Virus record (IMG/VR): IMGVR_UViG_3300042340_000379
Span: 1-64,000 of that record
Reading direction: 5' to 3' (one strand)
Length of the DNA stretch: 64,000 bases
Shown here in pieces: positions 3,943 through 14,330 of the stretch. Numbering within the stretch: the first letter of the stretch is position 1; every line of letters starts with the position of its first letter. A model generated the notes under the pieces. The model worked only from the letters and a program-made list of their open reading frames with translations, ran no database searches and was not told where the DNA came from. Both the position numbers and the translations under genes were made by a program.

Positions 3943-4000
3943 CAGAGTGGATGAACGGAACTCCCGACGCGAAGTTTGGAGCTCCAAGCGATCGCTCTCC

Positions 4001-4015
4001 TTTGTATCATACAAA
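4001..4015. promoter_or_regulatory. palindromic site TTGTAYNRTACAA
   Basis: TTTGTATCATACAAA, 31 nt before ATG 4047; related copies elsewhere. Confidence 0.55.
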
Positions 4016-4046
4016 TTAACAAGCTAACAACCCCAAGAAATATACT

Positions 4047-4477
4047 ATGACTGATTTTGATTTAGAACAAAGAATTGAGAGCGGCTACTACAGAACCAAA
4101 AAGCCCTACGCACTGTCGGATGAGCAATTTAACACTTTTCATGATGAGATAGACGCTCTAGATAGCATTCCACTAACAATCTCTGATCGAAAGCTGAAAA
4201 AGAAAGAAATTATTCAGCGCAAAAAAAACAAGCAATCAAAGAGTTACAACGCGAGTACCACGCTGATAGAAACCGCCTCTTGGATGAGTTTCAACTAGAC
4301 TGCGAGCATTGGCATAATTTTGCTAGTTTCCCACCTGTAATTAAGCGCAAAATTCATGGCATGGTTGAAAGCACAGAAGGACTTAAAAACAAGTCCGATA
4401 AATATGACGAGCTAGTAGAACTTGTTAGTCAATGCATTAAGACTATGCGAGAGTTTATTGAGAGCGAGGGACTGTAA
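4047..4477 (+). pseudogene. single hypothetical gene split by a frameshift in an A8 run (4221-4228)
   Basis: The alternative frame after the A-run reads QAIKELQREYHADRNRLLDEF and runs into ORF 4280..4477. Confidence 0.6.
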
Positions 4478-5163
4478 TGAAACAAAACATCCTTGTCATA
4501 GAAAAGTCGGCCTTGATAGAACCCAAAGGCCGACTTACCAGCATCACCAAGCCCGACGACCAGCAGCCAATTCCCGGCATGCAGGCGCGGATTAAAGAAT
4601 TAGCTGCTGACTACCAGATTTTTCTGGTAGGTAACGAGCCCCAGTGGAAACCTACTGAAACGCTAGCCCAAAACTTTCCAATTGGGGCGCATCTTTATGA
4701 TCCCCTTGCAACTGATTGCTGCCTAGTGATAAATAAAGTAGAGTTTCCTGGGGAAGTAAGGTTAGCGTTAAACCCAAACAAGGATGGAAAAGATCACACC
4801 TATATCCTTCGAGGCTCAAAAGTCCTATTTCAGTGGAAGACATCAAAGCTGATAGCCCAAGAGTATCAGTATGTATTAGAGCTATTCCCAGAAATAGATC
4901 ATGCCTACTTTTCAGGAGACAAAAATGTCTGCTTTCTTGTCACTCGCTGCGGTTTACAGCAAGTAAAAAACCTCAAGTCTGATTGGGATTATAGCCTGCC
5001 TAATCCAGGAATGCTTTGGCTAGCCGCACAAGCTAAAGACAATCATTTAGAAAAAGGTGAGCATCTGTTTATAAGCAAAGAGTCCGCTTACAAACAGAAA
5101 ATTGACCATGAGTCTGGGTTCCTATTTATGCTGCAAAGCGAGCTTTTAGGAGTGTCCGCGTGA
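4477..5163 (+). CDS. degenerate HAD-IIIA (GmhB / polynucleotide 3'-phosphatase-like) protein
   Basis: PDDQQPIPG, GN.., EYQYVLELFP and LPNPGML resemble HAD-IIIA, but the DxD and Lys catalytic residues are missing. Confidence 0.5.
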   Translation: MKQNILVIEKSALIEPKGRLTSITKPDDQQPIPGMQARIKELAADYQIFLVGNEPQWKPTETLAQNFPIGAHLYDPLATDCCLVINKVEFPGEVRLALNPNKDGKDHTYILRGSKVLFQWKTSKLIAQEYQYVLELFPEIDHAYFSGDKNVCFLVTRCGLQQVKNLKSDWDYSLPNPGMLWLAAQAKDNHLEKGEHLFISKESAYKQKIDHESGFLFMLQSELLGVSA

Positions 5164-5372
5164 ATAAGTTTTTCTCTATCGCCTTTATTATTTGGCATAC
5201 AGGATTTCTAGTTTCCTTCTGGCGTGCAAAGTACTCTAACACTTGGGAAGAGCTCCTCAGTCGAACAGGTCTTTCGTTAGCCTGGCCCGCATTTCTTGGG
5301 CTAAAGACTTACGATAGGACGAAAGCTCGTGCCAAACCCACCGTCACTTCCGCTAATAACATAACACTCTAA
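5160..5372 (+). CDS. small membrane protein
   Basis: Hydrophobic segments, coupled GTGA start/stop. Confidence 0.6.
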   Translation: MNKFFSIAFIIWHTGFLVSFWRAKYSNTWEELLSRTGLSLAWPAFLGLKTYDRTKARAKPTVTSANNITL

Positions 5373-6098
5373 ATGACCTTCTCTCGCAATAATTGGGAGC
5401 CTATAATGCCAATCGACGCTAACTATCGCCGCAAAAAGGTTTTAGATTTTCTTGCCTCAATTCACACCTATATTGGCAGAGTTCCCGACTCTCCCTGCGA
5501 GCTTGAACTCCGCACAGCATTAGAATCAGAAGAAGGATTTTCCCTAGAAGAGCCCACTTCTAATATTCTTAATCTAATAGCTGACATGCATAATTCTTTC
5601 AGCATTGCCATTGGAAAAAATAACCCAATGAGTGCTCAAGAAAACCGGCTTTTAACTTGCTTAGAAAAGTTAAGCAAGCAGTTAGATGACCAAGCTATTG
5701 AAAACGATAGCCAATGGGAAAGTCGAATGCAGTCTTTGCAAACAGCCACCGAAAAGTTCACCCGCCAGGTTCCAGATCTCAATCTAACCCTGCGGGATCG
5801 CCGCAAGATGATTCTCCAGATGTGTGAGAGCGTAACCCGCAATTTACGCTACAGAAGCGGGCCGCTTGCCGTTTATGAACAAGTTATCTACGAAGAAGTG
5901 TGCCTATGGCTAACCTTTAAGCTGAGTGTCGAGAATCTGGATATACGCGACCGTACTTTAGATGTGCTTCTAAAAACAAAGGAGTGGATTAGCAACCAAA
6001 TAGCGCGGGATAACTGCCAGAATCCTGATGAATACGCAATCTATGTAAGCTCAATGGTTATTTTTAAAACCCTACAAAATTCAACCTTTGGAGGTTAA
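5373..6098 (+). CDS. hypothetical protein
   Basis: 241-aa ORF abutting the previous gene. Confidence 0.7.
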   Translation: MTFSRNNWEPIMPIDANYRRKKVLDFLASIHTYIGRVPDSPCELELRTALESEEGFSLEEPTSNILNLIADMHNSFSIAIGKNNPMSAQENRLLTCLEKLSKQLDDQAIENDSQWESRMQSLQTATEKFTRQVPDLNLTLRDRRKMILQMCESVTRNLRYRSGPLAVYEQVIYEEVCLWLTFKLSVENLDIRDRTLDVLLKTKEWISNQIARDNCQNPDEYAIYVSSMVIFKTLQNSTFGG

Positions 6099-6102
6099 CC
6101 CC

Positions 6103-6522
6103 ATGACACTAAGAAAACTAATCGGCCAGCTATCTCTAAACGAATTGAAAGAACTAACTCAAGAGCATTCTGATTGGGAGAAAAATCAATTTATTCCCCT
6201 GGATGCAAAACTGCGTAAGATAGCAAAGCAGCATTACAGCGACGATAGCGTGCTCCTGATGGAGCGTGTAGCTAATGAAGCCTATCGAACAATCGCTCTT
6301 CAATCTCTAAAAGAAAAGCCGCAGCCCTACGCGCTTATTTCCGTTGCTGAGCGGTCATATATTATTCACACCAGCCGACAAGATGAAATCCATCTGCAAG
6401 AAAAAATTAGTGCAGTGAGCGTCAAGTTCTTTGAAAGCCTGTCTTTGGCCAGACAGTTCTACTTGAGAAACTACGACAGCGGGCTGGACGAAGAGTTTGC
6501 TCAACCAAAAGGTGAAAAGTGA
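6103..6522 (+). CDS. hypothetical protein
   Basis: GGAGG RBS before ATG 6103. Confidence 0.7.
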   Translation: MTLRKLIGQLSLNELKELTQEHSDWEKNQFIPLDAKLRKIAKQHYSDDSVLLMERVANEAYRTIALQSLKEKPQPYALISVAERSYIIHTSRQDEIHLQEKISAVSVKFFESLSLARQFYLRNYDSGLDEEFAQPKGEK

Positions 6523-6623
6523 GATACATAGTTCAAATTCTCAAAACTCAACGCTAGACAGCCAGGCCCCTCCAGCCAGTCGCGGCAGTGCGCACAAGCC
6601 AGTGCTTATGATATGATTTAAAA

Positions 6624-6707
6624 GCTAGGACTACAACTTTCTTCCTTCTACTTCTATATACAACAGGCCTCGCGCCTGTATTGCCATAGAATGTTGAATT
6701 TCCTAGC
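6624..6707 (+). ncRNA. Y-RNA-like repeat unit 1
   Basis: GCTAGG-ACTA-CAACTTTC-TTCCTTC...ATA-GAATGTTG-AATTT-CCTAGC; outer and inner stems pair; internal hairpin ACAGGC/GCCTGT. Confidence 0.75.
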
Positions 6708-6713
6708 AACCTT

Positions 6714-6778
6714 TCTGGCCTAAGCGGGTCTTCCTTCAATTGAAATTTGTAACTCTAATAGACCCGCTAATTTCCAGA
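6714..6778 (+). ncRNA. Y-RNA-like repeat unit 2
   Basis: TCTGG-CCTA-AGCGGGTC-TTCCTTCA...ATA-GACCCGCT-AATTT-CCAGA; perfect 8-bp inner stem. Confidence 0.8.
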
Positions 6779-7140
6779 CCACCTCAAAAATATAAGAAGG
6801 GTCGTTTTGGATCATAGCTAAACTGTATAAGATTAAAATCTTACAGAGGCCAACCAAACAGGAATACTCAAGTGGCTTCCAGGCCTACCTTCAAAATACT
6901 CCACACCTCTTTGCCCACGTACAAGTGTCCTGATGCGTGATAAGTCGCCGCATGGCGCGATCGCCTCTCTGGCTCTGGCATAAGTGTGGAGCCCCTATAA
7001 CAGCAAGCCAAATGCTCACCAGAGCGCGAGCTGTTATAGAACCCCTCAAACAAAGGCGACCAAAAGTACCAAACGGCCTAGATTGAAAATATCTGCAAGC
7101 CAAATGCTCACTTAAGTCACCAGCGTCCCTGAGGGTTTTC

Positions 7141-7270
7141 GGGTCAGTAGCTCAGCGGTAGAGCGCCAGCATTATACACTCTCTCCAATTCCTGCTGAAG
7201 GCGGATTAGGAGAAAGTTCCTTCATTAAAATGGGAGCTGAATGTCGCAGGTTCAAATCCTGCCTGGCCCA
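7141..7270 (+). tRNA. tRNA body with a 58-nt structured insertion in the anticodon loop (tRNA-Pro(TGG)-like if spliced, or a permuted Y RNA tRNA mimic)
   Basis: Acceptor GGGTCAG/CTGGCCC+A, D arm GCTC-AGCGGTA-GAGC, anticodon stem CCAGC/GCTGA, T arm GCAGG-TTCAAAT-CCTGC; insertion at about 7173-7230. Confidence 0.85.
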
Positions 7271-7271
7271 A

Positions 7272-7292
7272 TTGGGAATCGAGGATTCCCAA
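7272..7292 (+). other. perfect hairpin immediately 3' of the interrupted tRNA (processing or termination signal?)
   Basis: TTGGGAATC-GAG-GATTCCCAA. Confidence 0.5.
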
Positions 7293-7379
7293 ACCCTCAG
7301 TATTAGTTCTTGCTATGTACAACTAAAGCCGCAAGCTTTGGCCCTTGGGCAAGTAAGAAACACCCTAATGCAAAATAAG

Positions 7380-7506
7380 GGGCAATATACTGAGGTTTGC
7401 ACATGGCTAGCCCGCCAAGGCTAGAGCGGCTGCGTAGAACGGGGTTGGCACCCAAGTGGCGTAGTCCCATTGGAGAACAGGTTAGTTTTGAGTCTACCAA
7501 TGCCCA
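7380..7506 (+). ncRNA. degenerate tRNA-like element (Gly-GCC-like) with a long structured variable region
   Basis: GGGCAAT/AATGCCC+A acceptor-like stem, CTAGCC-CGCCAA-GGCTAG arm, degenerate T arm GGTTAG-TTTTGAGT-CTACC. Confidence 0.35.
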
Positions 7507-7549
7507 TAAACAAAATCTTGGTTAGCGCCCAAGTTGAAATAAAGAGCTC

Positions 7550-7961
7550 GGGGATGATTTGGAGTTAGGCGAACAACTGACAAACCTCCAGAAAGACTCC
7601 CCCACTAAAATCCAGGGCTGGCATCCTGGTCTTAGCGACAGCCTGAGTGATTGACCGCGAGGAATCGTTGGAAAAGATCGCTATTGCTGCTAATGAATGG
7701 GGCCCCAACTTCGGGTACCCCAAGCAGCTCTCATTGAAGCACTGCATGAGCACCAGTGTAGAGAGTGTAGCTCCAGCCGGGAAGGGATTCCCAAAGACCC
7801 GGCAAATTAAATCCAAACTAAGAAAATCCCCCTTGGGATTAACCGTAACTTAGTTTGGTTTGCGCCAATCGGTTGGTGTGATCGCGGGCATCTAAAAACC
7901 AGTAAACTGAGGGGAGCAAACAAAAAGACCAGAAACTGGTTGGTACCTAGACGCTCCCCTC
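7550..7961 (+). ncRNA. candidate large structured ncRNA of unknown family
   Basis: At least 8 nested or tandem helices, no convincing ORF, located in the tRNA cluster. Confidence 0.5.
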
Positions 7962-8030
7962 TTACAAAATTCTCAAAAACTATGAAAACATACAAATCTG
8001 CCGCCTCTACGTGCAGCGGGGATGCAATAG

Positions 8031-8357
8031 ATGAATAAAATTAAAATTTATTTTTTCCCAGATTGGGTACACATCGCGCCTCCTTGGGCGATCGCACCTG
8101 CTTCAGGTGAATCTCCTGTCTATGCAAAGCTGGAGTGCAATCATGACATCGCTATCGACCTGGTCAATGGATTCGTTCACCTGAAGATCGGGTATATGAC
8201 CAGTTGTAAAGCAGGAGAGGCGCGAAGTCTGAGCAAGATGCTCGAATATGCCGCCGATATCTGTTCTGAGGCTAATCAGTATAGATATTATGTAGAGCAT
8301 CCAACACTACTGAAGGCTTACTTGCCTGATGCTGATGTGTATATTGTGGAGGAATGA
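8031..8357 (+). CDS. hypothetical protein
   Basis: 108-aa ORF, GGGG RBS-like sequence. Confidence 0.6.
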   Translation: MNKIKIYFFPDWVHIAPPWAIAPASGESPVYAKLECNHDIAIDLVNGFVHLKIGYMTSCKAGEARSLSKMLEYAADICSEANQYRYYVEHPTLLKAYLPDADVYIVEE

Positions 8358-8884
8358 TAAATGCATCATCTAGAAGAATTCATAAAACAAGGTGTGCTTC
8401 GCGCTGAGGCTGCTAACACCAAAAAGTTGACCGGGTGGCGAAAAGTTCACAAAATTAGTCTTGGGCCAATTAAGCCATCTTACTGCCTCGATTGCGGTAA
8501 ACCTAGATGTATCTGAGCCGGATCTAGAAAAACTATTAAGTTAAGGTGGTGTAACGCTCGAAGTAAAAGATCTAATAGAATATAGACGCAAGAGAGATGC
8601 TAAACTTAGAACCCTTCGTGGATTCGTCGTTGAGCGCTTATTCTAATTGAACTCAACTCAGAGAGCTGCTGATAAAGAAATTTGCAAAGACGCTAAAGAA
8701 TGGTTTAAGAATGAGTATAAAAACTGACGCTGAATATACAGCCTTTCTTGACGAAGCCTTTTTATTGCTTCAAGTCGTTAATCGAAGTGATAATGAAGAA
8801 GCTAGATTAAATGAGCTTGTAAAAGCAATTGATCAGTGGGAAGATATAGTTTTCGCTGTTCCTCAATATTAACAATCCCTTTAG

Positions 8885-8959
8885 GGGGCGGAAGCTCAGC
8901 CTGGTAGAGCAGTCGGCTTTTAACCGATTGGACGTAGGGTTCAAATCCCACCCGCCCCA
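8885..8959 (+). tRNA. tRNA-Lys(TTT), slightly atypical (A at position 8, bulged A in T stem, no encoded CCA)
   Basis: GGGGCGG/CCGCCCC+A acceptor, GTCGG-CTTTTAA-CCGAT anticodon arm, GGG-TTCAAAT-CCC T loop. Confidence 0.85.
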
Positions 8960-8962
8960 CTT

Positions 8963-9045
8963 GCCGGACTAGAAACCTCTTCCTTCAAAAACCAACCGCC
9001 CCCTCGGGGGCACCATAGAAGAAAACAGAGGTTTCACTTCCCGGC
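8963..9045 (+). ncRNA. Y-RNA-like repeat unit 3
   Basis: GCCGG-ACTA-GAAACCTC-TTCCTTCA...ACA-GAGGTTTC-ACTTC-CCGGC. Confidence 0.8.
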
Positions 9046-9175
9046 CTACACACGCAGTTAGTGACTGCAACCAAACAGAAAAACAATTGCTCTAAAAGAG
9101 AGGTAAGGATATGTAGCGAGCGTCAAGACTTTGGTCTATAAATAACACAAACTTGAAATTCTTTACCTAAAAATC

Positions 9176-9237
9176 GCCGGACTAGAGCCAACTTCCTTCA
9201 ATAACTTTGGATGTAAATAGTTGGCTCACTTCCCGGC
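9176..9237 (+). ncRNA. Y-RNA-like repeat unit 4
   Basis: GCCGG-ACTA-GAGCCAAC-TTCCTTCA...ATA-GTTGGCTC-ACTTC-CCGGC; ends 21 nt before the start codon of the 739-aa gene. Confidence 0.8.
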
Positions 9238-9258
9238 CCCTTCTCCCTAAAGGAAGCT

Positions 9259-11478
9259 ATGAAAACTGAGATCTTGTTCAATCGTCTCAAGGCAATTTCC
9301 GTTTCTACAAGCGGATTAGCCGAAACAACAAAGCTACACAAACTTATTAAACTCAACTACCTCTCAGAATTTGCCCAGCTAGGTTTCTTCTTTGAGAACG
9401 ATCATCTATTCAATGACTCTGCTCTCGAGAACTTCTCTGAAGTCATCGCCCTGGCCACCAAAATGCGCGGCGGGGATATAGAGTACGCTCCCCTCTTTTC
9501 TGGATTCCCTAATCAGGTGCCAGATCAAGATGTTTATATGCTTCAGAGATTGCTCTCAGTTTTGATGGCAATTCCTGTCTTAGACCCTGAGACTCATGGA
9601 CGAGTTTACTGTGTTCCCAATCTATTCGACCCCTCAGTGTTTGGCGCTGACCCCGTCTTTCAGATGCAGAACAAGGAACTATTTGACAACGCCGTTGCTG
9701 AGCAAAAGGCTCGGGGTCTTGATTCTGTCCATAAATGGGTAGAGCTAGAGTTTATTCCTGAGAATCTTGTTGATGAAATTCTGCAAAACTGGGTCTACAG
9801 CTGCATCTACGCAAAATCCTCTATTCAAGAGAATTGGCAGGCTGACATTGCCTGGCTGTTAGCTTACTTCCCCACTATTGGGAAGCCCATGCAATTCGAC
9901 AATTCTCGGATTGTTCACCGCGAAAACAAAACCTTTCTCACCAAGCACTTTTGGGAGAATTGCCTTTACTCTCAAGCAATTCATCTAATGAGTTCAGCTA
10001 CTGACTGCTTGCGCTTGTTTGCGGCCTTAACCGGCAGCGACATTTCCCTAGCAGAGAAGATTAAATTCCCCAAGCTCAGCAGGGCCCAACGGAAAATCAT
10101 CCTATCTGTTCTAGAACGCAAGGAAGCCCAGACGATCGCGGAAGAGCTGAATATCTACAAAGATCTCTGGCTCGAACTCGGGCGGTATATTCACCCTACC
10201 GAGTATCGTCGTCAATACCCCAAAACGGCTGAGGCGTTTAATCTACTTCGGAATGGAAAAGTCGAAACGTTTAATGGGAAAGTGCAAAGCCTTCTAAAGA
10301 ATGGTCATTATCTTTTAGCCTCAGCCTTGCTGGCAAAGAAGCCTGGCCTATTCGCTCGACATATCGTTGACCTGATGCGTAAAGCAACAGAAGAAGAAGG
10401 CCAATTGATCGCTGGTCTTTTTGGAACCGTAGCTGACCAGGTGCCCGTCAAGACGCTGATGACTATTCACTCTTACGTGATGGGTCTAAAAGCAAGCGAA
10501 AAAACAGCGGTCATTATTAAGAATGGCAAAATTCAGGTTCTTGACCGACCTTCAGTTCTTCCGTTCTCAAAAAGGGATAATTTGATGGAGGCCCTTGACA
10601 AAGGCCTAACCCAGCTATCTGACAAAGAAACCTGGGAAGATAAATCCATCTATTTTGACGAACGCCTACGCAAATATGTACTGCCACTTTCTGAAAGGAA
10701 ATTGTCAGATAGCATGTTGCCAATGGCTCGTGGCACTAGGGTTAAAGTCAAAGGCCCAGTTGTACGCTTGTTCGCGTACTGGAAAGAAGAAGGTGAAAGA
10801 ACTGACCTTGACCTTTCCATTCTCATGTTGGATGACAAATTCAACGCTCTGAGCCATGTGTCCTACACAAATCTGAGAGAAGGCAAAGTTGTTCACTCAG
10901 GTGATGTCCAATCCGCGCCTTATGGTGCTGTCGAGTTCATTGACATCCCTCTAAGCTACGACTGCAGCAAACTTCTCCCTTCTTATGTCAAGAAAGAGAG
11001 CAAAGTACGCTACGTCGCAGTTGAAATCCACCGATACGCAGGGCATAAGTTTAGTGAAATGCCTCAAGCATTCACTGGCTGGATGGAGCGCGAGGAAGTT
11101 AACAACGACCGCGCCAGCTTCGACCCCAAAACTGTAGCTAACAAGTTACAGCTCACGGGTGGTGCTCAATACAGCATTCCAATCATTTTCGACCTTCTAA
11201 CCCAAGAAATGATTTACACCGATCTCTACGTGAGCGGGAATAAAGCAGGGTTTAACCGGGTTGAGGATGCAGCGGATAATGTCTGTCTGATCGCTGAACA
11301 GATAGCTAGATTTGTGGAAGTCAAGCCCACGTTCTATGATTTGTTATCCATCAATATCACCCATCGAGGTGGTACTTTGGTTGATGACATAGAGGACGCG
11401 GATATTGTGTTCGGCGTTAGTCCTAGTGCTGACTACGGGCCTTTTCAAGTTGGACGGGTTCTTAGCGAGCTGCTATAA
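9259..11478 (+). CDS. Helical-repeat (putative Ro60/TROVE-like) + C-terminal TerD-like domain protein (MXAN_6230/SCO0854-type)
   Basis: AAGGAAG RBS; N-terminal PLFSGFP..VP and FGADP; ATDCLR, HP.EY and KPGLFAR helical region; TerD-like DLDLS...HSGDVQSAP..A.EFID. Confidence 0.7.
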   Translation: MKTEILFNRLKAISVSTSGLAETTKLHKLIKLNYLSEFAQLGFFFENDHLFNDSALENFSEVIALATKMRGGDIEYAPLFSGFPNQVPDQDVYMLQRLLSVLMAIPVLDPETHGRVYCVPNLFDPSVFGADPVFQMQNKELFDNAVAEQKARGLDSVHKWVELEFIPENLVDEILQNWVYSCIYAKSSIQENWQADIAWLLAYFPTIGKPMQFDNSRIVHRENKTFLTKHFWENCLYSQAIHLMSSATDCLRLFAALTGSDISLAEKIKFPKLSRAQRKIILSVLERKEAQTIAEELNIYKDLWLELGRYIHPTEYRRQYPKTAEAFNLLRNGKVETFNGKVQSLLKNGHYLLASALLAKKPGLFARHIVDLMRKATEEEGQLIAGLFGTVADQVPVKTLMTIHSYVMGLKASEKTAVIIKNGKIQVLDRPSVLPFSKRDNLMEALDKGLTQLSDKETWEDKSIYFDERLRKYVLPLSERKLSDSMLPMARGTRVKVKGPVVRLFAYWKEEGERTDLDLSILMLDDKFNALSHVSYTNLREGKVVHSGDVQSAPYGAVEFIDIPLSYDCSKLLPSYVKKESKVRYVAVEIHRYAGHKFSEMPQAFTGWMEREEVNNDRASFDPKTVANKLQLTGGAQYSIPIIFDLLTQEMIYTDLYVSGNKAGFNRVEDAADNVCLIAEQIARFVEVKPTFYDLLSINITHRGGTLVDDIEDADIVFGVSPSADYGPFQVGRVLSELL

Positions 11479-11515
11479 TTAGGCAGTCATTGTAGACTCC
11501 TTGATTTGGTAGTTT

Positions 11516-11551
11516 AGGGCTGGCTGCATAAGCTGGCCCTCTTTATTTTTT
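11516..11551 (+). terminator. intrinsic terminator
   Basis: AGGGCTGGCT...AGCTGGCCCT hairpin followed by a T-rich tract. Confidence 0.65.
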
Positions 11552-11562
11552 AGGAGATAGGA

Positions 11563-11799
11563 ATGGTTGTATTACTTATGAGCTTTAATATGCATAAAGT
11601 AACAAAGCTATTCGTCAGGAACAAGAAGACAGGAGAGTTTTAAGACATCAGCTATTGATATGAGTGGGGAAAAGAAAACATCAGATTAAGGTGGCATCTC
11701 CTAAACCATGCCTCTCTAGAGACTCAAGTTGAGGGTGTCATGTCCGAGAACCAAAAACGGGCAACCCAAATCGCGCAGTTAACTCAAATCTTTCAGTAG
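11563..11799 (+). pseudogene. small gene with two in-frame stops
   Basis: AGGAGA RBS; the frame stays protein-like through a TAA and a TGA to the terminal TAG at 11797-11799. Confidence 0.45.
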
Positions 11800-11819
11800 T
11801 TTACCAAAGGATAATCATT

Positions 11820-13975
11820 ATGCTTACCGCAGAATTCCGCCCTGGCACATTGGTTATCCTTTCTGGGGCCCCTGGTTCTGGTAAAAGCAGCCTAGCCGCT
11901 CAATACCCAGAGCATGTTGTTAGTTCAGACAATTTGCGAGCTACCTTCTTTGGCTATCAAAATGAGCTGATTGAAGAGCGCCCCACGTTCTATCTCTACG
12001 GAGTTGATTCGAGGGCATCTGAACGACCCAGAAATCTTGACGATGGATTTATCTTTGAAACCCTAGAAAAGATTGTCGATGTCCGTATGAAAAACGGGAT
12101 GACGACAATTGTAGATGCCACCAGCCCAACTGACACCGATCGCCACAAGTTCGCGAAGATTGCAGAAAAGTACGGTCGGCCCGTACTAATTTGCATCATG
12201 GATGTACCTAAGGAAACTCTCTACAAACGAAACGCCAGTAGAAAGTTCCCGGTTAGCAATAGCGTAGTTGATCGATTTGTAGACAAACTAGAGCTGACCA
12301 GCCATTGGCCCTACATCTTAAATCCTGAGTTACTAAACGTTAACTACTGGACAATCCAAGCTGATCAGCCCCTAGACATTATTGGGGATATTCATGGCTG
12401 CGTTGAGGTCATTAACTTAGTAGAACGGTTAGGTTATATGCATGGAGTTCACCCACAAGGGCGCAAACTTCTCTTCCTAGGAGATATGGTGGATCGCGGC
12501 CCCCATTCCTTAAAAGTTCTTGAGTTTGTTATGGGTTTAGTGAGCCAAGGACACTACTGTGTTCTTGCCAACCATGAAGCCAATCTGCTTAAAGGTCTAA
12601 AAGGTGAAGAAGTACGATCGCACGCAACCCGCCGCACTCTCCATGAAGTTCTGTTATCTGGTAAACAAAAAGAGATCCAAAAGTTTATCGAAGAGCGCCC
12701 CCCGTTCTATCTTTATGGAGTAGACACGTTAATCTGCCATGCAGACACAACAAGCTTCTTCTACAAATCTACACTCAAAGAAGCCGTTTATGGCACTTCT
12801 ACCCTAAGTCGAGCAGTAGATAGCGATGCAATATTCGCCGCGCATTACCCTAACCGCAGGTTAATTCGAGGTCATATTGCTGCAACTAGCCCTCAGCACA
12901 ACGTTTTTGCGCTAGAAGAAGGAGCAGGATATAGCGCGGGCTTTATAGTAGCCTGTCGAGCAAGCATTGGCGGAAACTCTCTAGAGTTCTTCCGCGAGCC
13001 CACCACGTTTGTGTACAAAGATCTTCCAAAGACTTTTGAGCAACGGATGGAGCCTCTAGTCAAGACTAAATTGGTAAATGTGGATAAGTGCGGCCCGCTC
13101 AAACTGTTTAAGTACAGCAGCAAGGCATTTTACAATCCTGAAACGTTTGCTGAAAATCCTGACTTAGGCCTCGCTCGAACTGTAGTAACAGGTTTAGATG
13201 GAGAGCCCATCGGGAGTACCTTTCCTAAAATCTACAACTATGGAGAAAAAGAAGCGCCTGAAATTGACCTTAACGAAGAAATCATCTGGGTTGAAAAGCT
13301 CAATGGATTCTTCGCGCAGGTTTTTCTTGACCCTTACTCTGTAAAGCCTAAGCTTATATACACCTCTTCAGGAAAGTTTACTGGAGAGTTTGCTGAAATG
13401 GCTCGCCAGAATATCCAGCAGTATTCTGGCGCTATTATTCGACTCTTCAAAACTTCAGACGTTAAAAACCTAATGTTTGAAATTGTTGACGCCAGAGACC
13501 CCCATATTGTGGATTACTCAGAAGAAGAGTATGGTGCCTATCTAATTGGAGCCGGATATAAAATGGGCTAGCTAGTGAGCATGTTCTAGACTACATGTCT
13601 CTTTCACTTGATGAGCTGCGCCGTCCATACCGCGGTCGCGCCACGTATAGGGAGGTACTAGAGAAAACAAAAGCATGTGATCGTGAAGGGTACATGGTTC
13701 GCAGTTTAACTGGAGAGCATCTCGTTAAACTGAAGTCTCCTACCTACCTAGCGATTAAATTCATCTCACGCATGAGCAATGAGAGCGACACCGTGATGTT
13801 CCGCAATCCAACTGTCACCAAGCAGAAGATTCGCGCTCGGGGGCTAGAAGAGCTACAATTCGTTGTAGATATAATAGTTGAACAGCTTACTGAGGAAGCA
13901 TGGAAAGCCATGAACTCAATCGAGCGGCGAGACTACCTTATTCCCCTAGTTAAGAGTGAGTATGCTTATGCTTGA
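11820..13975 (+). CDS. Polynucleotide kinase - metallophosphatase - RNA ligase (Pnkp/Rnl1-like RNA repair enzyme), with a frameshift at about 13560
   Basis: GAPGSGKS, VVSSD..R and IVDAT kinase motifs; IGDIHG, GDMVDRG and ANHE phosphatase motifs; ligase motif I EKLNG, FEIV, then REGYMV and VKLKS in the second frame (13595..13975). Confidence 0.85.
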
Positions 13976-14330
13976 TGTTACGCCAACTCATATCGGCGGC
14001 TATCAAATTACCTCTAATGTAAACCTAGCCGCTGGTACTGTAACTCTCTCTGTTGTTTTTAGAACGCCAAGTCGGAATCCGCCTGCCGGAAAGCGATTTG
14101 TTTACGAATCGGAGGTGTCTTTCTCTGCCACAGCTGCAACTCCAACAGAAGCGGTGGCAGTTCTAAAGAAAAAGATGGAGACTCATCTTAGTAAGCTAAC
14201 CAAAGCAGGAGTACCCTGGCCCAGCCGTAACGCGGGCCAGTACCTTCAACTTGCAAACTTTAAACCTCTTCCCATAAGTCTGGAGCAATCAGAGCAGCAA
14301 CCAGGGCCGCAGCGTATTTACGCTAATTAG
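13962..14330 (+). CDS. hypothetical protein
   Basis: Overlaps the ligase stop; start codon uncertain. Confidence 0.55.
   Translation: MLMLDVTPTHIGGYQITSNVNLAAGTVTLSVVFRTPSRNPPAGKRFVYESEVSFSATAATPTEAVAVLKKKMETHLSKLTKAGVPWPSRNAGQYLQLANFKPLPISLEQSEQQPGPQRIYAN

What the first reader, a model, noticed from the sequence alone, without database searches (positions are those of the whole stretch)
7141..7270. tRNA whose anticodon loop carries a circularly permuted copy of the repeat motif
Seen: a canonical tRNA body is interrupted at about 7173-7230 by ACA-CTCTCTCC-AATTC-CTGC-[TGAAG]-GCGG-ATTA-GGAGAAAG-TTCCTTCA. These are the motif parts in permuted order: the 3' half comes first, the outer stem is closed by a loop, and the tRNA occupies the place of the variable loop. 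Removing 7173-7230 gives a 7-nt loop AT-TGG-GA (Pro TGG anticodon with G37). There are no group I intron core sequences. Inference: it is either a new class of protein-dependent tRNA intron, excised and sealed by the neighbouring Ro-like protein and ligase, or a permuted tRNA-mimic Y RNA with free, possibly chargeable acceptor ends.
Basis: partly seen in the sequence, partly recalled or inferred. Interest (0 to 1): 0.88.

Follow-up and report, generated by a model that had tools for sequence, protein, structure and literature searches.

The report
tRNA-shaped RNA carrying a protein-binding hairpin
The "interrupted tRNA" is real, but it is most likely not a tRNA with an intron: it belongs to a widespread, apparently undescribed family of small structured RNAs that always sit beside one large protein gene in phages and bacteria, here built in tRNA order so that it looks like a tRNA whose anticodon loop has been replaced by the family's hairpin.

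Summary
Window 7141-7270 (+) is a tRNA body (Rfam tRNA, 54.7 bits) with about 60 nt in the anticodon loop. That insert is a circular permutation of a motif with four plain copies nearby: 6623-6708, 6712-6780, 8961-9047 and 9174-9239.

The motif is a real RNA family.
- Its two helices covary.
- A covariance model found 220 copies next to homologues of the 739-aa protein (9259-11478) in 106 bacterial and phage loci. All are on the gene's strand.
- Many copies carry a tRNA-like domain (T arm, closed acceptor hairpin, D arm), as in bacterial YrlA Y RNAs.

The window RNA is the same design in tRNA order: open acceptor, closed hairpin.
- About 15 further examples exist. One lies 20 nt from a homologue, and a soil group lies within tRNA arrays upstream of homologues.
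- A model built without the window scores it at 80.3 bits, against 51.1 bits for an ordinary tRNA.

The intron reading is disfavoured. The module mostly occurs outside tRNAs, and hypothetical "anticodons" differ among near-identical bodies.

The partner protein shows no detectable Ro60 similarity. It has a helical repeat and a TerD-like domain. The neighbouring enzyme is Pnkp-like, and RtcB follows in Bacteroidota. Function is inferred: a Y-RNA-like RNP linked to tRNA repair.

The parts
7141..7270 (+). tRNA-order member of the RNA family ('type iii'). It is a tRNA body whose anticodon loop is replaced by the closed module. Acceptor stem 7141-7147/7263-7269; D arm 7150-7164; anticodon stem 7166-7170/7236-7240; T arm 7246-7262; discriminator A at 7270; no encoded CCA.
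   Evidence: Rfam tRNA 54.7 bits with a 60-nt insert. Own tRNA model R2: 55.8 bits. Type-iii model R3, built without this sequence: 80.3 bits, E 1.5e-20, full length.
7179..7224 (+). Permuted module inside the tRNA body. Order: inner-stem 3' strand 7179-7186, AAUUC 7187-7191, outer stem 7192-7195/7201-7204 closed by UGAAG 7196-7200, AUUA 7205-7208, inner-stem 5' strand 7209-7216, conserved loop word UUCCUUCA 7217-7224.
   Evidence: Sequence read, fold and structure-aware alignment to R3. The helices of the class covary.
6623..6708 (+). Plain (unpermuted) module copy 1, with a hairpin in its variable loop.
   Evidence: R1 45.5 bits, E 1.4e-8; not in the training set. Fold z = -4.7.
6712..6780 (+). 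Plain module copy 2.
   Evidence: R1 54.3 bits (in the training set). Fold z = -4.6.
8885..8960 (+). Ordinary tRNA-Lys(UUU). Plain module copy 3 follows 3 nt after it.
   Evidence: ARAGORN; Rfam 59.8 bits.
8961..9047 (+). Plain module copy 3, with a GC-rich hairpin in its variable loop.
   Evidence: R1 48.5 bits, E 2.7e-9; not in the training set. Fold z = -5.1.
9174..9239 (+). Plain module copy 4. It ends 20 nt before the start codon of the partner protein gene.
   Evidence: R1 54.9 bits. Fold z = -4.7.
9259..11478 (+). Partner protein, 739 aa. The predicted structure has an N-terminal alpha/beta part, a helical repeat (about residues 170-410) and a TerD-like beta sandwich (about 490-660). 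It matches part of the NCBIfam model for the MXAN_6230/SCO0854 family and phrog_33734.
   Evidence: No TROVE domain. Its homologues are the anchor of every module array found.
11820..13571 (+). Pnkp-like RNA end-healing enzyme. It has a P-loop kinase, a metallophosphoesterase and a short Rnl1-like C-terminal segment.
   Evidence: Pfam AAA_33 and Metallophos; TIGR04075 bacter_Pnkp, partial; phrog_8238 and phrog_562 RNA ligase.
7129..7300 (+). A 10-bp stem (7129-7138 with 7291-7300) that brackets the tRNA-order RNA plus a small hairpin (7274-7290). It may be a precursor structure. It is specific to this window.
   Evidence: Sequence read. The stem is kept in the minimum-free-energy and centroid folds of 7085-7345.

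Best explanation
Window 7141-7270 is a non-coding RNA of a modular family that partners with the 739-aa protein encoded 2 kb downstream.

**The module (shown).** The family's constant part is a bulged hairpin:
- an outer stem ending in an invariant GG/CC
- a 4-nt internal loop on the 5' side and a 5-nt internal loop on the 3' side
- an 8-bp inner stem
- a single-stranded UU(C/A)CUUC word

The variable part sits in the hairpin loop. It can be nothing, a small hairpin, a T arm, or a whole tRNA-like domain.

**Three topologies (shown).**
- In most tRNA-bearing copies the RNA ends lie in the outer stem and the acceptor stem is closed by a loop. This is the YrlA-like topology.
- In a few copies the module is joined to the acceptor end.
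- In the window copy the gene is circularly permuted. The outer stem is closed by a 5-nt loop and the acceptor stem is open. The RNA therefore reads as a tRNA with the module in place of the anticodon loop.

**Inferred steps.**
- The RNA is cut out of a polycistronic transcript by RNase P and RNase Z, like the tRNAs around it. It may be CCA-tailed.
- The partner protein binds the module.
- The tRNA-shaped body acts as a handle or bait for tRNA-directed enzymes. This would be part of a tRNA-damage surveillance or repair system working with the adjacent Pnkp-like enzyme (RtcB in bacterial loci). The arrangement is functionally analogous to Ro60/Rsr, Y RNA and RtcB.

The module is not removed by splicing.
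For: **The module is a real structured RNA.**
- In a 48-sequence alignment, 12 of 15 pairs show double compensatory changes.
- Model R1 finds 4 copies in the window, 89 in 50 of 71 bacterial loci and 131 in 56 of 65 phage loci.
- All 220 locus hits are on the strand of the homologous protein gene and lie next to it.

**tRNA-like domains occur inside the module loop.**
- These copies carry a T arm, a closed acceptor hairpin and a D arm.

**tRNA-order relatives exist.**
- L202 8180-8313 is a tRNA hit at 55.6 bits with a 66-nt insert, 20 nt downstream of a homologue.
- A soil metagenome group of about 12 sequences lies 130-1,100 nt upstream of homologues of the SCO0854 family, inside tRNA arrays.
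- Across 13 such RNAs, 90.8 % of cells are paired, against 35-48 % when partners are slid.
- 6 of 7 acceptor pairs, 4 of 5 anticodon-stem pairs, 5 of 8 inner-stem pairs and 3 of 4 outer-stem pairs show compensatory changes.
- R3, built without the window, scores it at 80.3 bits.

**It is not a read-through of two tandem units.**
- There is no other tRNA-like half near 7141-7270.
- The two inner-stem strands are complementary, 7 of 8.

**The context is RNA repair.**
- A Pnkp-like gene is adjacent.
- In Bacteroidota the layout is WYL regulator, then protein, then RNA array, then RtcB.
- In Rhodococcus phage Weasels2, RtcB lies 3 kb downstream.
- All 211 tRNA-model hits in the phage loci are on the gene's strand.

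**Precedent.**
- YrlA Y RNAs carry a tRNA-like domain. Mycobacterium smegmatis YrlA is cut by RNase P and CCA-tailed (PMC4201824).
- The Salmonella rsr-yrlBA-rtcBA operon responds to damaged tRNAs (PMC7790460).
Against: - There are no expression, processing or binding data. The protein-RNA interaction rests only on conserved adjacency and shared strand.
- The partner protein has no recognised RNA-binding domain.
- The flanks of the insert keep tRNA-like residues: CU at positions 32-33 in 10 of 13 sequences, and a purine then A at positions 37-38 in 12 of 13. Precise excision would therefore give a canonical 7-nt loop, which is what an intron model predicts.
- The enzymes nearby (Pnkp-like, RtcB) are also the healing and sealing enzymes of tRNA splicing.
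- In the window, a 10-bp stem brackets the RNA. This could hinder RNase P or RNase Z, or could mean the RNA works as part of a longer transcript.
- The window and L202 bodies do not share the tRNA-Lys-like ancestry of the soil group. The tRNA-order form may have arisen more than once.
Confidence: 0.72

Rival explanations
1. It is a genuine decoding tRNA, for example tRNA-Pro(UGG). It carries a new kind of short, protein-dependent intron, which an unknown endonuclease cuts out. The halves are then healed and sealed by the neighbouring Pnkp-like enzyme or ligase.
For: - The tRNA body is canonical, with a 7-bp acceptor stem and discriminator A.
- Residues 32-33 and 37-38 are kept at the insert flanks in most relatives.
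- Healing and sealing enzymes are adjacent.
- The relatives sit inside tRNA arrays.
Against: - The 'intron' is a conserved, covarying module. It occurs more than 200 times outside tRNAs, and also in RNAs whose acceptor stem is closed by a loop, which cannot be tRNAs.
- The hypothetical anticodons are Pro, Gln, Lys, Arg, Thr, Asn and Ser among soil-group bodies that are nearly identical and resemble tRNA-Lys(CUU). Only a 3' GGA or UAA is conserved.
- There is no group I core. By inspection there is no bulge-helix-bulge: the junctions are 8-nt and 19-nt single strands.
- No candidate endonuclease was identified.
- The excision point is not unique.
Confidence: 0.08
2. It is a Ro60-type Y RNA in the strict sense (YrlA class), and the 739-aa protein is a cryptic, extremely divergent Ro60/TROVE relative.
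For: - The overall logic matches the rsr-yrlBA-rtcBA operon (PMC4201824, PMC7790460).
- In locus L232 a genuine Ro60 gene (Pfam TROVE 2.6e-30 plus vWA_Ro60) is preceded by two tRNA-order RNAs. Their hairpins have the same layout and a UU(C/A)CUUCG loop.
- The protein model gives a weak fold hit to a phage TROVE protein (E 0.016, probability 0.89).
Against: - No TROVE or vWA match in Pfam or NCBIfam for the protein or for 25 homologues.
- hhalign of the family profile against the L232 Ro60 gives probability 0.4 %.
- No Ro60 among PDB fold matches.
- The Rsr-binding word GNCGAA(N)G is absent from the window modules, which have GG-AYUA/CCUA-stem instead.
- Ro60's vWA domain is replaced by a TerD-like sandwich.
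Confidence: 0.1
3. It is a dead tRNA gene, an ordinary phage tRNA accidentally disrupted by insertion or recombination of a nearby repeat unit, and has no function of its own.
For: - Plain repeat units and a tRNA gene lie within 2 kb.
- No close relative of this phage is available to test conservation of this exact locus.
Against: - The same architecture recurs in at least 14 other sequences from unrelated contigs.
- Compensatory changes keep the acceptor, anticodon, T, inner and outer stems paired.
- In the window copy, every stem of both the body and the module is intact.
Confidence: 0.04

Closest known systems
YrlA-type bacterial Y RNAs with Rsr (Ro60) in rsr-yrlBA-rtcBA RNA-repair operons (Chen et al. 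2014, PMC4201824; Hughes et al. 2020, PMC7790460)
   Same: - Small RNAs are encoded in arrays beside a large protein gene and an RNA repair ligase.
- The design is modular: a protein-side stem plus a tRNA-like domain (T arm, D arm, acceptor stem).
- They are also present in phages.
[quoted passage not shown]
   Different: - The partner protein has no detectable TROVE or vWA domain.
- The stem lacks the GNCGAA(N)G word and instead has its own signature: GG / 4-nt loop / 8-bp stem / UU(C/A)CUUC.
- The window RNA has the opposite topology, with an open acceptor and a closed protein-side stem.
- No Rfam family matches.
Intron-containing tRNAs: cyanobacterial group I introns in tRNA-Leu(UAA) and tRNA-fMet, and archaeal or eukaryal bulge-helix-bulge introns
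   Same: Extra sequence sits inside the anticodon loop of a tRNA-shaped gene. The host is probably cyanobacterial, since a HIP1 GCGATCGC site is present.
   Different: - The insert is 58-65 nt, against more than 200 nt for group I introns.
- There is no group I core.
- There is no bulge-helix-bulge.
- The insert is a conserved stand-alone RNA module elsewhere.
Circularly permuted tRNA-like RNA genes: two-piece tmRNA (ssrA) of cyanobacteria and alpha-proteobacteria, and permuted tRNA genes of the red alga Cyanidioschyzon merolae (from general knowledge, not tested here)
   Same: One RNA architecture is encoded in two circularly permuted gene orders, with the ends moved from one helix to another.
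   Different: Those are translation RNAs, and the permuted form needs processing to restore function. Here both gene orders appear to be used side by side as alternative scaffolds for the same protein-side module. ARAGORN finds no tmRNA in the window.
T4 Pnkp/Rnl1 repair of tRNA-Lys cut by the PrrC anticodon nuclease (from general knowledge)
   Same: The locus combines a phage Pnkp-like healing enzyme, a ligase-like segment and a phage tRNA-Lys(UUU). The soil-group RNAs have tRNA-Lys-like bodies.
   Different: No structured RNA cofactor or TerD-like protein is known in the T4 system. No anticodon nuclease was identified here.

Membership tests
Canonical decoding tRNA | Cloverleaf with a 7-bp acceptor stem, D arm, T arm and T-loop GTTCRANYC | tested here: met
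   Rfam RF00005 54.7 bits, full length. R2 55.8 bits.
Canonical decoding tRNA | A 7-nt anticodon loop with one definable anticodon | tested here: not met
   65 nt lie between the anticodon-stem strands. ARAGORN in default mode does not call it. Several different excisions give canonical loops.
Group I intron in a tRNA | Conserved catalytic core (P3-P9), usually more than 200 nt | tested here: not met
   No RF00028 or any other intron family, even at E <= 5, in 4000-14000. The insert is about 60 nt.
Bulge-helix-bulge (archaeal or eukaryal) tRNA intron | Two 3-nt bulges separated by a 4-bp helix at the splice sites, with the intron after position 37 | tested here: not met
   Checked by inspection of the sequence and folds. 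The junctions are single strands of 8 nt (7171-7178) and 19 nt (7217-7235). No such helix appears.
YrlA-type Y RNA (Ro60/Rsr partner) | Encoded next to a TROVE-domain (Ro60/Rsr) gene | tested here: not met
   The adjacent 739-aa protein has no TROVE domain in Pfam or NCBIfam. hhalign against a real Ro60 gives probability 0.4 %. No Ro60 among PDB fold hits. The only hint is a weak BFVD hit, E 0.016.
YrlA-type Y RNA (Ro60/Rsr partner) | The word GNCGAA(N0-1)G in the 5' strand of the protein-binding stem | tested here: not met
   The window modules read GG-ACUA/CCUA/AUUA-stem. The word does appear in approximate form (UGUCGUA, UGACGUA) in the Ro60-linked RNAs of L232.
YrlA-type Y RNA (Ro60/Rsr partner) | tRNA-like domain with T arm, D arm and acceptor stem | tested here: met
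   for the window RNA. for relatives.
YrlA-type Y RNA (Ro60/Rsr partner) | RNA ends in the protein-binding stem, with the acceptor stem closed by a loop | tested here: not met
   The window RNA has the reverse arrangement: the outer stem is closed by UGAAG and the acceptor is open. Many relatives do meet this feature.
UU(C/A)CUUC module RNA family defined here (models R1 and R3) | Outer stem ending GG/CC, 4-nt and 5-nt internal loops, 8-bp covarying inner stem, and a UU(C/A)CUUC loop word | tested here: met
   All parts are present in permuted order at 7179-7224. R3, built without the window, gives 80.3 bits, against 51.1 bits for an ordinary tRNA.
UU(C/A)CUUC module RNA family defined here (models R1 and R3) | Same strand as, and within a few kb of, a homologue of the 739-aa protein | tested here: met
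   The window RNA lies 2 kb upstream of 9259-11478 on the + strand. All 220 R1 hits in the loci obey this rule. So do L202 and the soil group.
UU(C/A)CUUC module RNA family defined here (models R1 and R3) | The RNA is expressed and bound by the protein | not testable with these tools
   No transcriptome or binding data are available.

The most novel reading that the evidence does not exclude
This would be a second, independently built 'Ro-like' ribonucleoprotein system of bacteria and phages. Its parts would be:
- a ~720-aa protein (helical repeat plus TerD-like domain, MXAN_6230/SCO0854 family) with no detectable relation to Ro60
- arrays of modular RNAs with a conserved bulged hairpin
- tRNA-like domains plugged onto that hairpin in three different topologies

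The tRNA-order version found in this window would be released from tRNA arrays by RNase P and RNase Z with authentic tRNA ends. It would then serve as a tRNA decoy, sensor or handle in tRNA-damage repair, or in phage counter-defence against anticodon nucleases.
Probability: 0.5. Interest if true: 0.88.

Novelty: new variant of a known kind. Interest (0 to 1): 0.78.

Why it matters
Y RNAs with Ro60 are the only well-known case of a protein that uses modular, tRNA-mimicking RNAs as adaptors in RNA quality control. What the tRNA-like part is for remains an open question.

This locus points to a parallel system with several useful properties:
- It has a different protein.
- It is present in many phyla, including Cyanobacteria, Bacteroidota, Myxococcota, Actinomycetota and Planctomycetota.
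- It is present in many large phages, where it is embedded in tRNA arrays and next to Pnkp or RtcB.

The family shows the tRNA-like part attached in three topologies. One has free acceptor ends. That makes the question [quoted passage not shown] directly testable.

It also gives a likely function to a large, widespread family of hypothetical proteins, often mis-named TerD or SCP2. It explains unannotated gaps in cultured phages such as Rhodococcus phage Weasels2.

For annotation, it warns that "tRNAs with introns" called in phage tRNA arrays can be either these RNAs or read-throughs of tandem units.

Tried and rejected
- **Group I or other known RNA families.** Rfam at gathering and at E <= 5 gave only the two tRNA hits.
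- **Close relatives of the phage by DNA.** Only tRNA-Lys matched.
- **Ro60 homology of the 739-aa protein.** Negative or marginal in every test: Pfam, NCBIfam, PDB sequence search, PDB fold search and hhalign. The one hint is a weak BFVD TROVE hit.
- **ARAGORN intron mode as a finder of relatives.** Of 41 long calls, most were fusions of adjacent tRNAs, or read-throughs from the D half of one tandem unit into the T half of the next (L026, L029, L033, L059, L124). I rejected these because their two inner-stem strands belong to different units and are not complementary, and because R2 and R3 score them at only 21-54 bits.
- **My first hand-written permuted-motif scan.** It was too noisy to use.
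- **L168 = L222.** This looked like a tRNA-order relative. It instead has an intact Thr(UGU) anticodon arm and a hairpin inserted between the D arm and the anticodon arm. I left it out.
- **L204 and L211.** Both are odd or damaged, so I left them out of the alignments.
- **Literature searches.** I searched for TerD with Y RNA, SCO0854, MXAN_6230, phrog_33734 and 'permuted tRNA-like'. None found a description of this system. The library is incomplete, so prior description cannot be excluded.
- **A pairing partner for UUCCUUC.** The loop word is invariant, so covariation cannot test any partner, for example the frequent downstream GGA. This remains open.
Full report
**What is at the coordinates.** The sequence at 7141-7270 (+) reads as follows.
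- 7-bp acceptor stem GGGUCAG/CUGGCCC
- D arm GCUC-AGCGGUA-GAGC
- 5-position anticodon stem CCAGC/GCUGA (four pairs)
- variable region AUGUC
- T arm GCAGG-UUCAAAU-CCUGC
- discriminator A, with no encoded CCA

Between the anticodon-stem strands lie 65 nt: AUUAUACA, CUCUCUCC, AAUUC, CUGC, UGAAG, GCGG, AUUA, GGAGAAAG, UUCCUUCA and UUAAAAUGGGA.

- Rfam's tRNA model aligns the whole body at 54.7 bits with a 60-nt insertion in the anticodon loop.
- ARAGORN misses it in default mode and calls it only when introns are allowed.
- No other Rfam family, and in particular no group I intron, matches the region even at E <= 5.
- That excision point is not unique, however. Other cuts give UAU or UAG loops that look just as canonical.

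**The repeat motif is a real structured RNA tied to one protein family.** Four unpermuted copies lie at 6623-6708, 6712-6780, 8961-9047 and 9174-9239. The third starts 3 nt after tRNA-Lys(UUU), and the fourth ends 20 nt before the ORF at 9259. Each folds far better than shuffled controls, with z from -4.6 to -5.1.

I fetched homologues of the 739-aa product of 9259-11478: 71 bacterial and 79 phage loci. The word TTCCTTC clusters right beside the gene on the gene's strand.

- A 48-sequence alignment of short-loop copies gives a consensus of two helices separated by a 4-nt and a 5-nt internal loop.
- 12 of the 15 pairs show double compensatory changes. The GG/CC pair, a C-G pair and UUCCUUC are invariant or nearly so.
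- The covariance model R1 finds the two window copies that were not in its training set, at E 1e-8 to 3e-9.
- R1 finds 89 copies in 50 of 71 bacterial loci and 131 copies in 56 of 65 phage loci.
- All 220 locus hits are on the strand of the protein gene. They lie downstream of it in most bacteria and upstream in most phages.
- Some lineages, such as Actinoplanes and Rhodococcus phage Weasels2, use UUACUUC or AUACUUCG in place of UUCCUUC.

**The variable loop often holds a tRNA-like domain, in three topologies.** In dozens of copies the loop contains, in order: a variable region, a T arm (GGUUCGAnUCC), an acceptor 3' strand, a short loop, an acceptor 5' strand, UA, a D arm (GCUCAGUUGGUAGAGC) and a short anticodon-stem remnant (folds).

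- That is the architecture described for YrlA Y RNAs (PMC4201824).
- Some copies carry only a T arm.
- One copy (L121 3392-3524) has a whole cloverleaf with a UUCG-closed anticodon arm, attached through its acceptor stem.
- The window RNA is the third arrangement: the same parts, with the outer stem closed by a 5-nt loop and the acceptor stem open.

**The tRNA-order form is a recurrent, selected class.** I ran an exact-pattern scan requiring a D-arm word, then TTCCTTC, then a T-arm word.

- In IMG/VR it found L202 8180-8313. This is an Rfam tRNA hit at 55.6 bits with a 66-nt insert, lying 20 nt downstream of a homologue of the protein.
- In metagenomes it found a high-GC group of about 12 sequences, plus L217.
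- Where enough flank is present (L214, L230, L235, L247), these RNAs lie 130-1,100 nt upstream of a distant homologue on the same strand.
- That homologue matches the NCBIfam MXAN_6230/SCO0854 model at E 2.5e-97. The RNAs are embedded in arrays of ordinary tRNAs.

I counted pairs on 13 tRNA-order RNAs.
- 90.8 % of cells are paired, against 35-48 % when partners are slid by 1-3 columns.
- Compensatory changes occur in 6 of 7 acceptor pairs, 4 of 5 anticodon-stem pairs, 3 of 5 T-stem pairs, 5 of 8 inner-stem pairs and 3 of 4 outer-stem pairs.

Model R3 was built from 11 of these RNAs without the window.
- It matches window 7141-7270 over its full length at 80.3 bits (E 1.5e-20).
- The neighbouring tRNA-Lys scores 51.1 bits by skipping the module.

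Apparent 'intron tRNAs' in tandem arrays of the YrlA-like form (L026, L029, L033, L059, L124 and others) are read-throughs. They score 21-54 bits and their inner-stem strands come from different units. The window copy is not of that kind. No other tRNA half lies nearby, and its inner strands pair 7 of 8.

**Intron or scaffold?** Several observations favour an intron.
- The insert flanks keep CU (positions 32-33) in 10 of 13 RNAs, and a purine then A (positions 37-38) in 12 of 13.
- The neighbouring enzymes are of the healing and sealing kind.

The observations against an intron are stronger.
- The inserted sequence is the conserved, covarying unit of the family. It is mostly found outside any tRNA, or in RNAs whose acceptor stem is closed.
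- There is no catalytic core and no bulge-helix-bulge.
- After the proposed excision, the soil group would give UGG, UUG, UUU, CCG, GGU, GUU, CUG and GCU 'anticodons'.
- Those bodies share nearly the same acceptor stem, T arm and discriminator, and they best match the neighbouring tRNA-Lys(CUU).
- What is conserved at the 3' flank is a GGA or UAA, not an anticodon.

I therefore read the tRNA-like residues as vestiges of the tRNA from which the scaffold was built.

**The partner and the context.**
- The 739-aa protein has no Pfam domain. It matches part of NF041916 and phrog_33734.
- Its homologues are often named TerD or SCP2. One of 25 homologues hits Pfam TerD.
- An AlphaFold model (pLDDT 87) shows an N-terminal alpha/beta part, a helical repeat (about residues 170-410) and a TerD-like sandwich (about 490-660).
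- It has no significant PDB fold neighbour and no Ro60 hit.
- hhalign against a genuine Ro60 is negative.
- BFVD gives full-length phage homologues, and only a weak hit to a phage TROVE protein (E 0.016).
- The next gene, 11820-13571, is Pnkp-like: a kinase, a metallophosphoesterase and a short Rnl1-like end.
- In Bacteroidota the locus is a divergent WYL regulator, then the protein, then the RNA array, then RtcB.
- In Rhodococcus phage Weasels2, three modules fill the unannotated gap after gp266, and RtcB lies 3 kb downstream.
- In the phage loci, all 211 tRNA-model hits share the gene's strand.

This is the layout of the Salmonella rsr-yrlBA-rtcBA operon, which responds to damaged tRNAs (PMC7790460), with a different protein in the place of Rsr.

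**Mechanism, and what is shown versus inferred.**

Shown:
- the RNA family and its structure
- its exclusive placement beside one protein family in the fetched loci
- the three topologies
- selection on both the tRNA body and the module in the tRNA-order class
- the RNA-repair and tRNA-array context

Inferred:
- the protein binds the module
- the tRNA-order RNA is released by RNase P and RNase Z, and perhaps CCA-tailed
- the tRNA-shaped body recruits or baits tRNA-directed enzymes in tRNA-damage surveillance, repair or phage counter-defence

The 10-bp stem that brackets the window RNA (7129-7138 with 7291-7300) is unexplained. It is not seen in relatives.

**Novelty.** No Rfam family and no paper in the searched library describes this module or its link to the protein family. 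The library is incomplete. The kind of system, a modular tRNA-mimicking RNA beside an RNA-repair operon, is known from Ro60/Y RNA. The partner protein, the module signature and the tRNA-order topology are new as far as I can tell. I rate it a new variant of a known kind, of high interest.

Noticed in passing
L232 5962-8674 (metagenome contig Ga0105099_10002320), minus strand: A genuine Ro60 gene (Pfam TROVE 2.6e-30 plus vWA_Ro60) is preceded by two tRNA-order RNAs, at 7656-7786 and 8543-8674. Each has a hairpin in the anticodon loop with the same layout as the window module. The loop reads UU(C/A)CUUCG, and the internal loop UGUCGUA or UGACGUA resembles the Rsr-binding word GNCGAA. This suggests that tRNA-order Y RNAs also exist for true Ro60, and that the two RNA families may share ancestry.
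   Followed up: partly
L168 1987-2114 (-), identical to L222 8324-8451 (+): A tRNA-Thr(UGU)-like gene with an intact anticodon arm carries a hairpin of about 54 nt inserted between the D arm and the anticodon arm. No homologue of the 739-aa protein lies in the fetched flank.
   Followed up: partly
window 7129-7138 with 7291-7300, and hairpin 7274-7290: A perfect 10-bp stem brackets the tRNA-order RNA together with a small 3' hairpin. It is kept in the minimum-free-energy and centroid folds. It is not seen around relatives, and its role is unknown. It could be a precursor-processing structure.
   Followed up: partly
window 6997-7019 and 7089-7111: A 23-nt direct repeat (ATAnCnGCAAGCCAAATGCTCAC, 91 % identical) lies in the non-coding stretch just upstream of the tRNA-order RNA. 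The first copy sits in a hairpin (CUAUAACAGC...GCUGUUAUAG).
   Followed up: no
window 8885-9047: tRNA-Lys(UUU) is followed after only 3 nt by a plain module copy, so the two are probably co-transcribed. tRNA-Lys(UUU) is the classical target of PrrC-type anticodon nucleases, and a Pnkp-like enzyme is encoded 3 kb downstream.
   Followed up: no
L230, L235, L221, L231 (soil metagenome contigs): The tRNA-order RNAs of the soil group have bodies that best match the neighbouring ordinary tRNA-Lys(CUU), with the same T arm and a near-identical acceptor stem. This points to local derivation from a tRNA-Lys gene.
   Followed up: partly
L248 5458-5817 (Rhodococcus phage Weasels2, NC_041887, about 85,477-85,836): Three module copies with loop word UUACUUC lie in an unannotated gap after gp266, which is a homologue of the protein. 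A tRNA array lies upstream and RtcB 3 kb downstream. This is a cultured phage in which the system could be tested.
   Followed up: partly
L250 1398-1528 and 2586-2744 (Rhodobacter phage RcXuper, OP186293): The 1.9-kb unannotated gap upstream of the homologue gp7 holds a tRNA-order RNA with a 7-bp acceptor stem and an insert of about 60 nt that lacks the UUCCUUC word. It also holds a second weak long tRNA-model hit. A nucleotidyltransferase gene follows gp7.
   Followed up: no
window 11965-12007 and 12682-12724: A 43-nt direct repeat (84 % identical) lies inside the Pnkp-like ORF and encodes a repeated ...EERPTFYLYGV... peptide. A third, weaker copy is at 11311-11337, at the end of the 739-aa ORF.
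   Followed up: no
window 1-64000: The window is the first 64 kb of a 207,855-bp IMG/VR contig (IMGVR_UViG_3300042340_000379). It carries phage genes (RIIA-like, Dda-like helicase, tail protein) and a HIP1 site (GCGATCGC at about 6949), which suggests a large cyanophage.
   Followed up: partly
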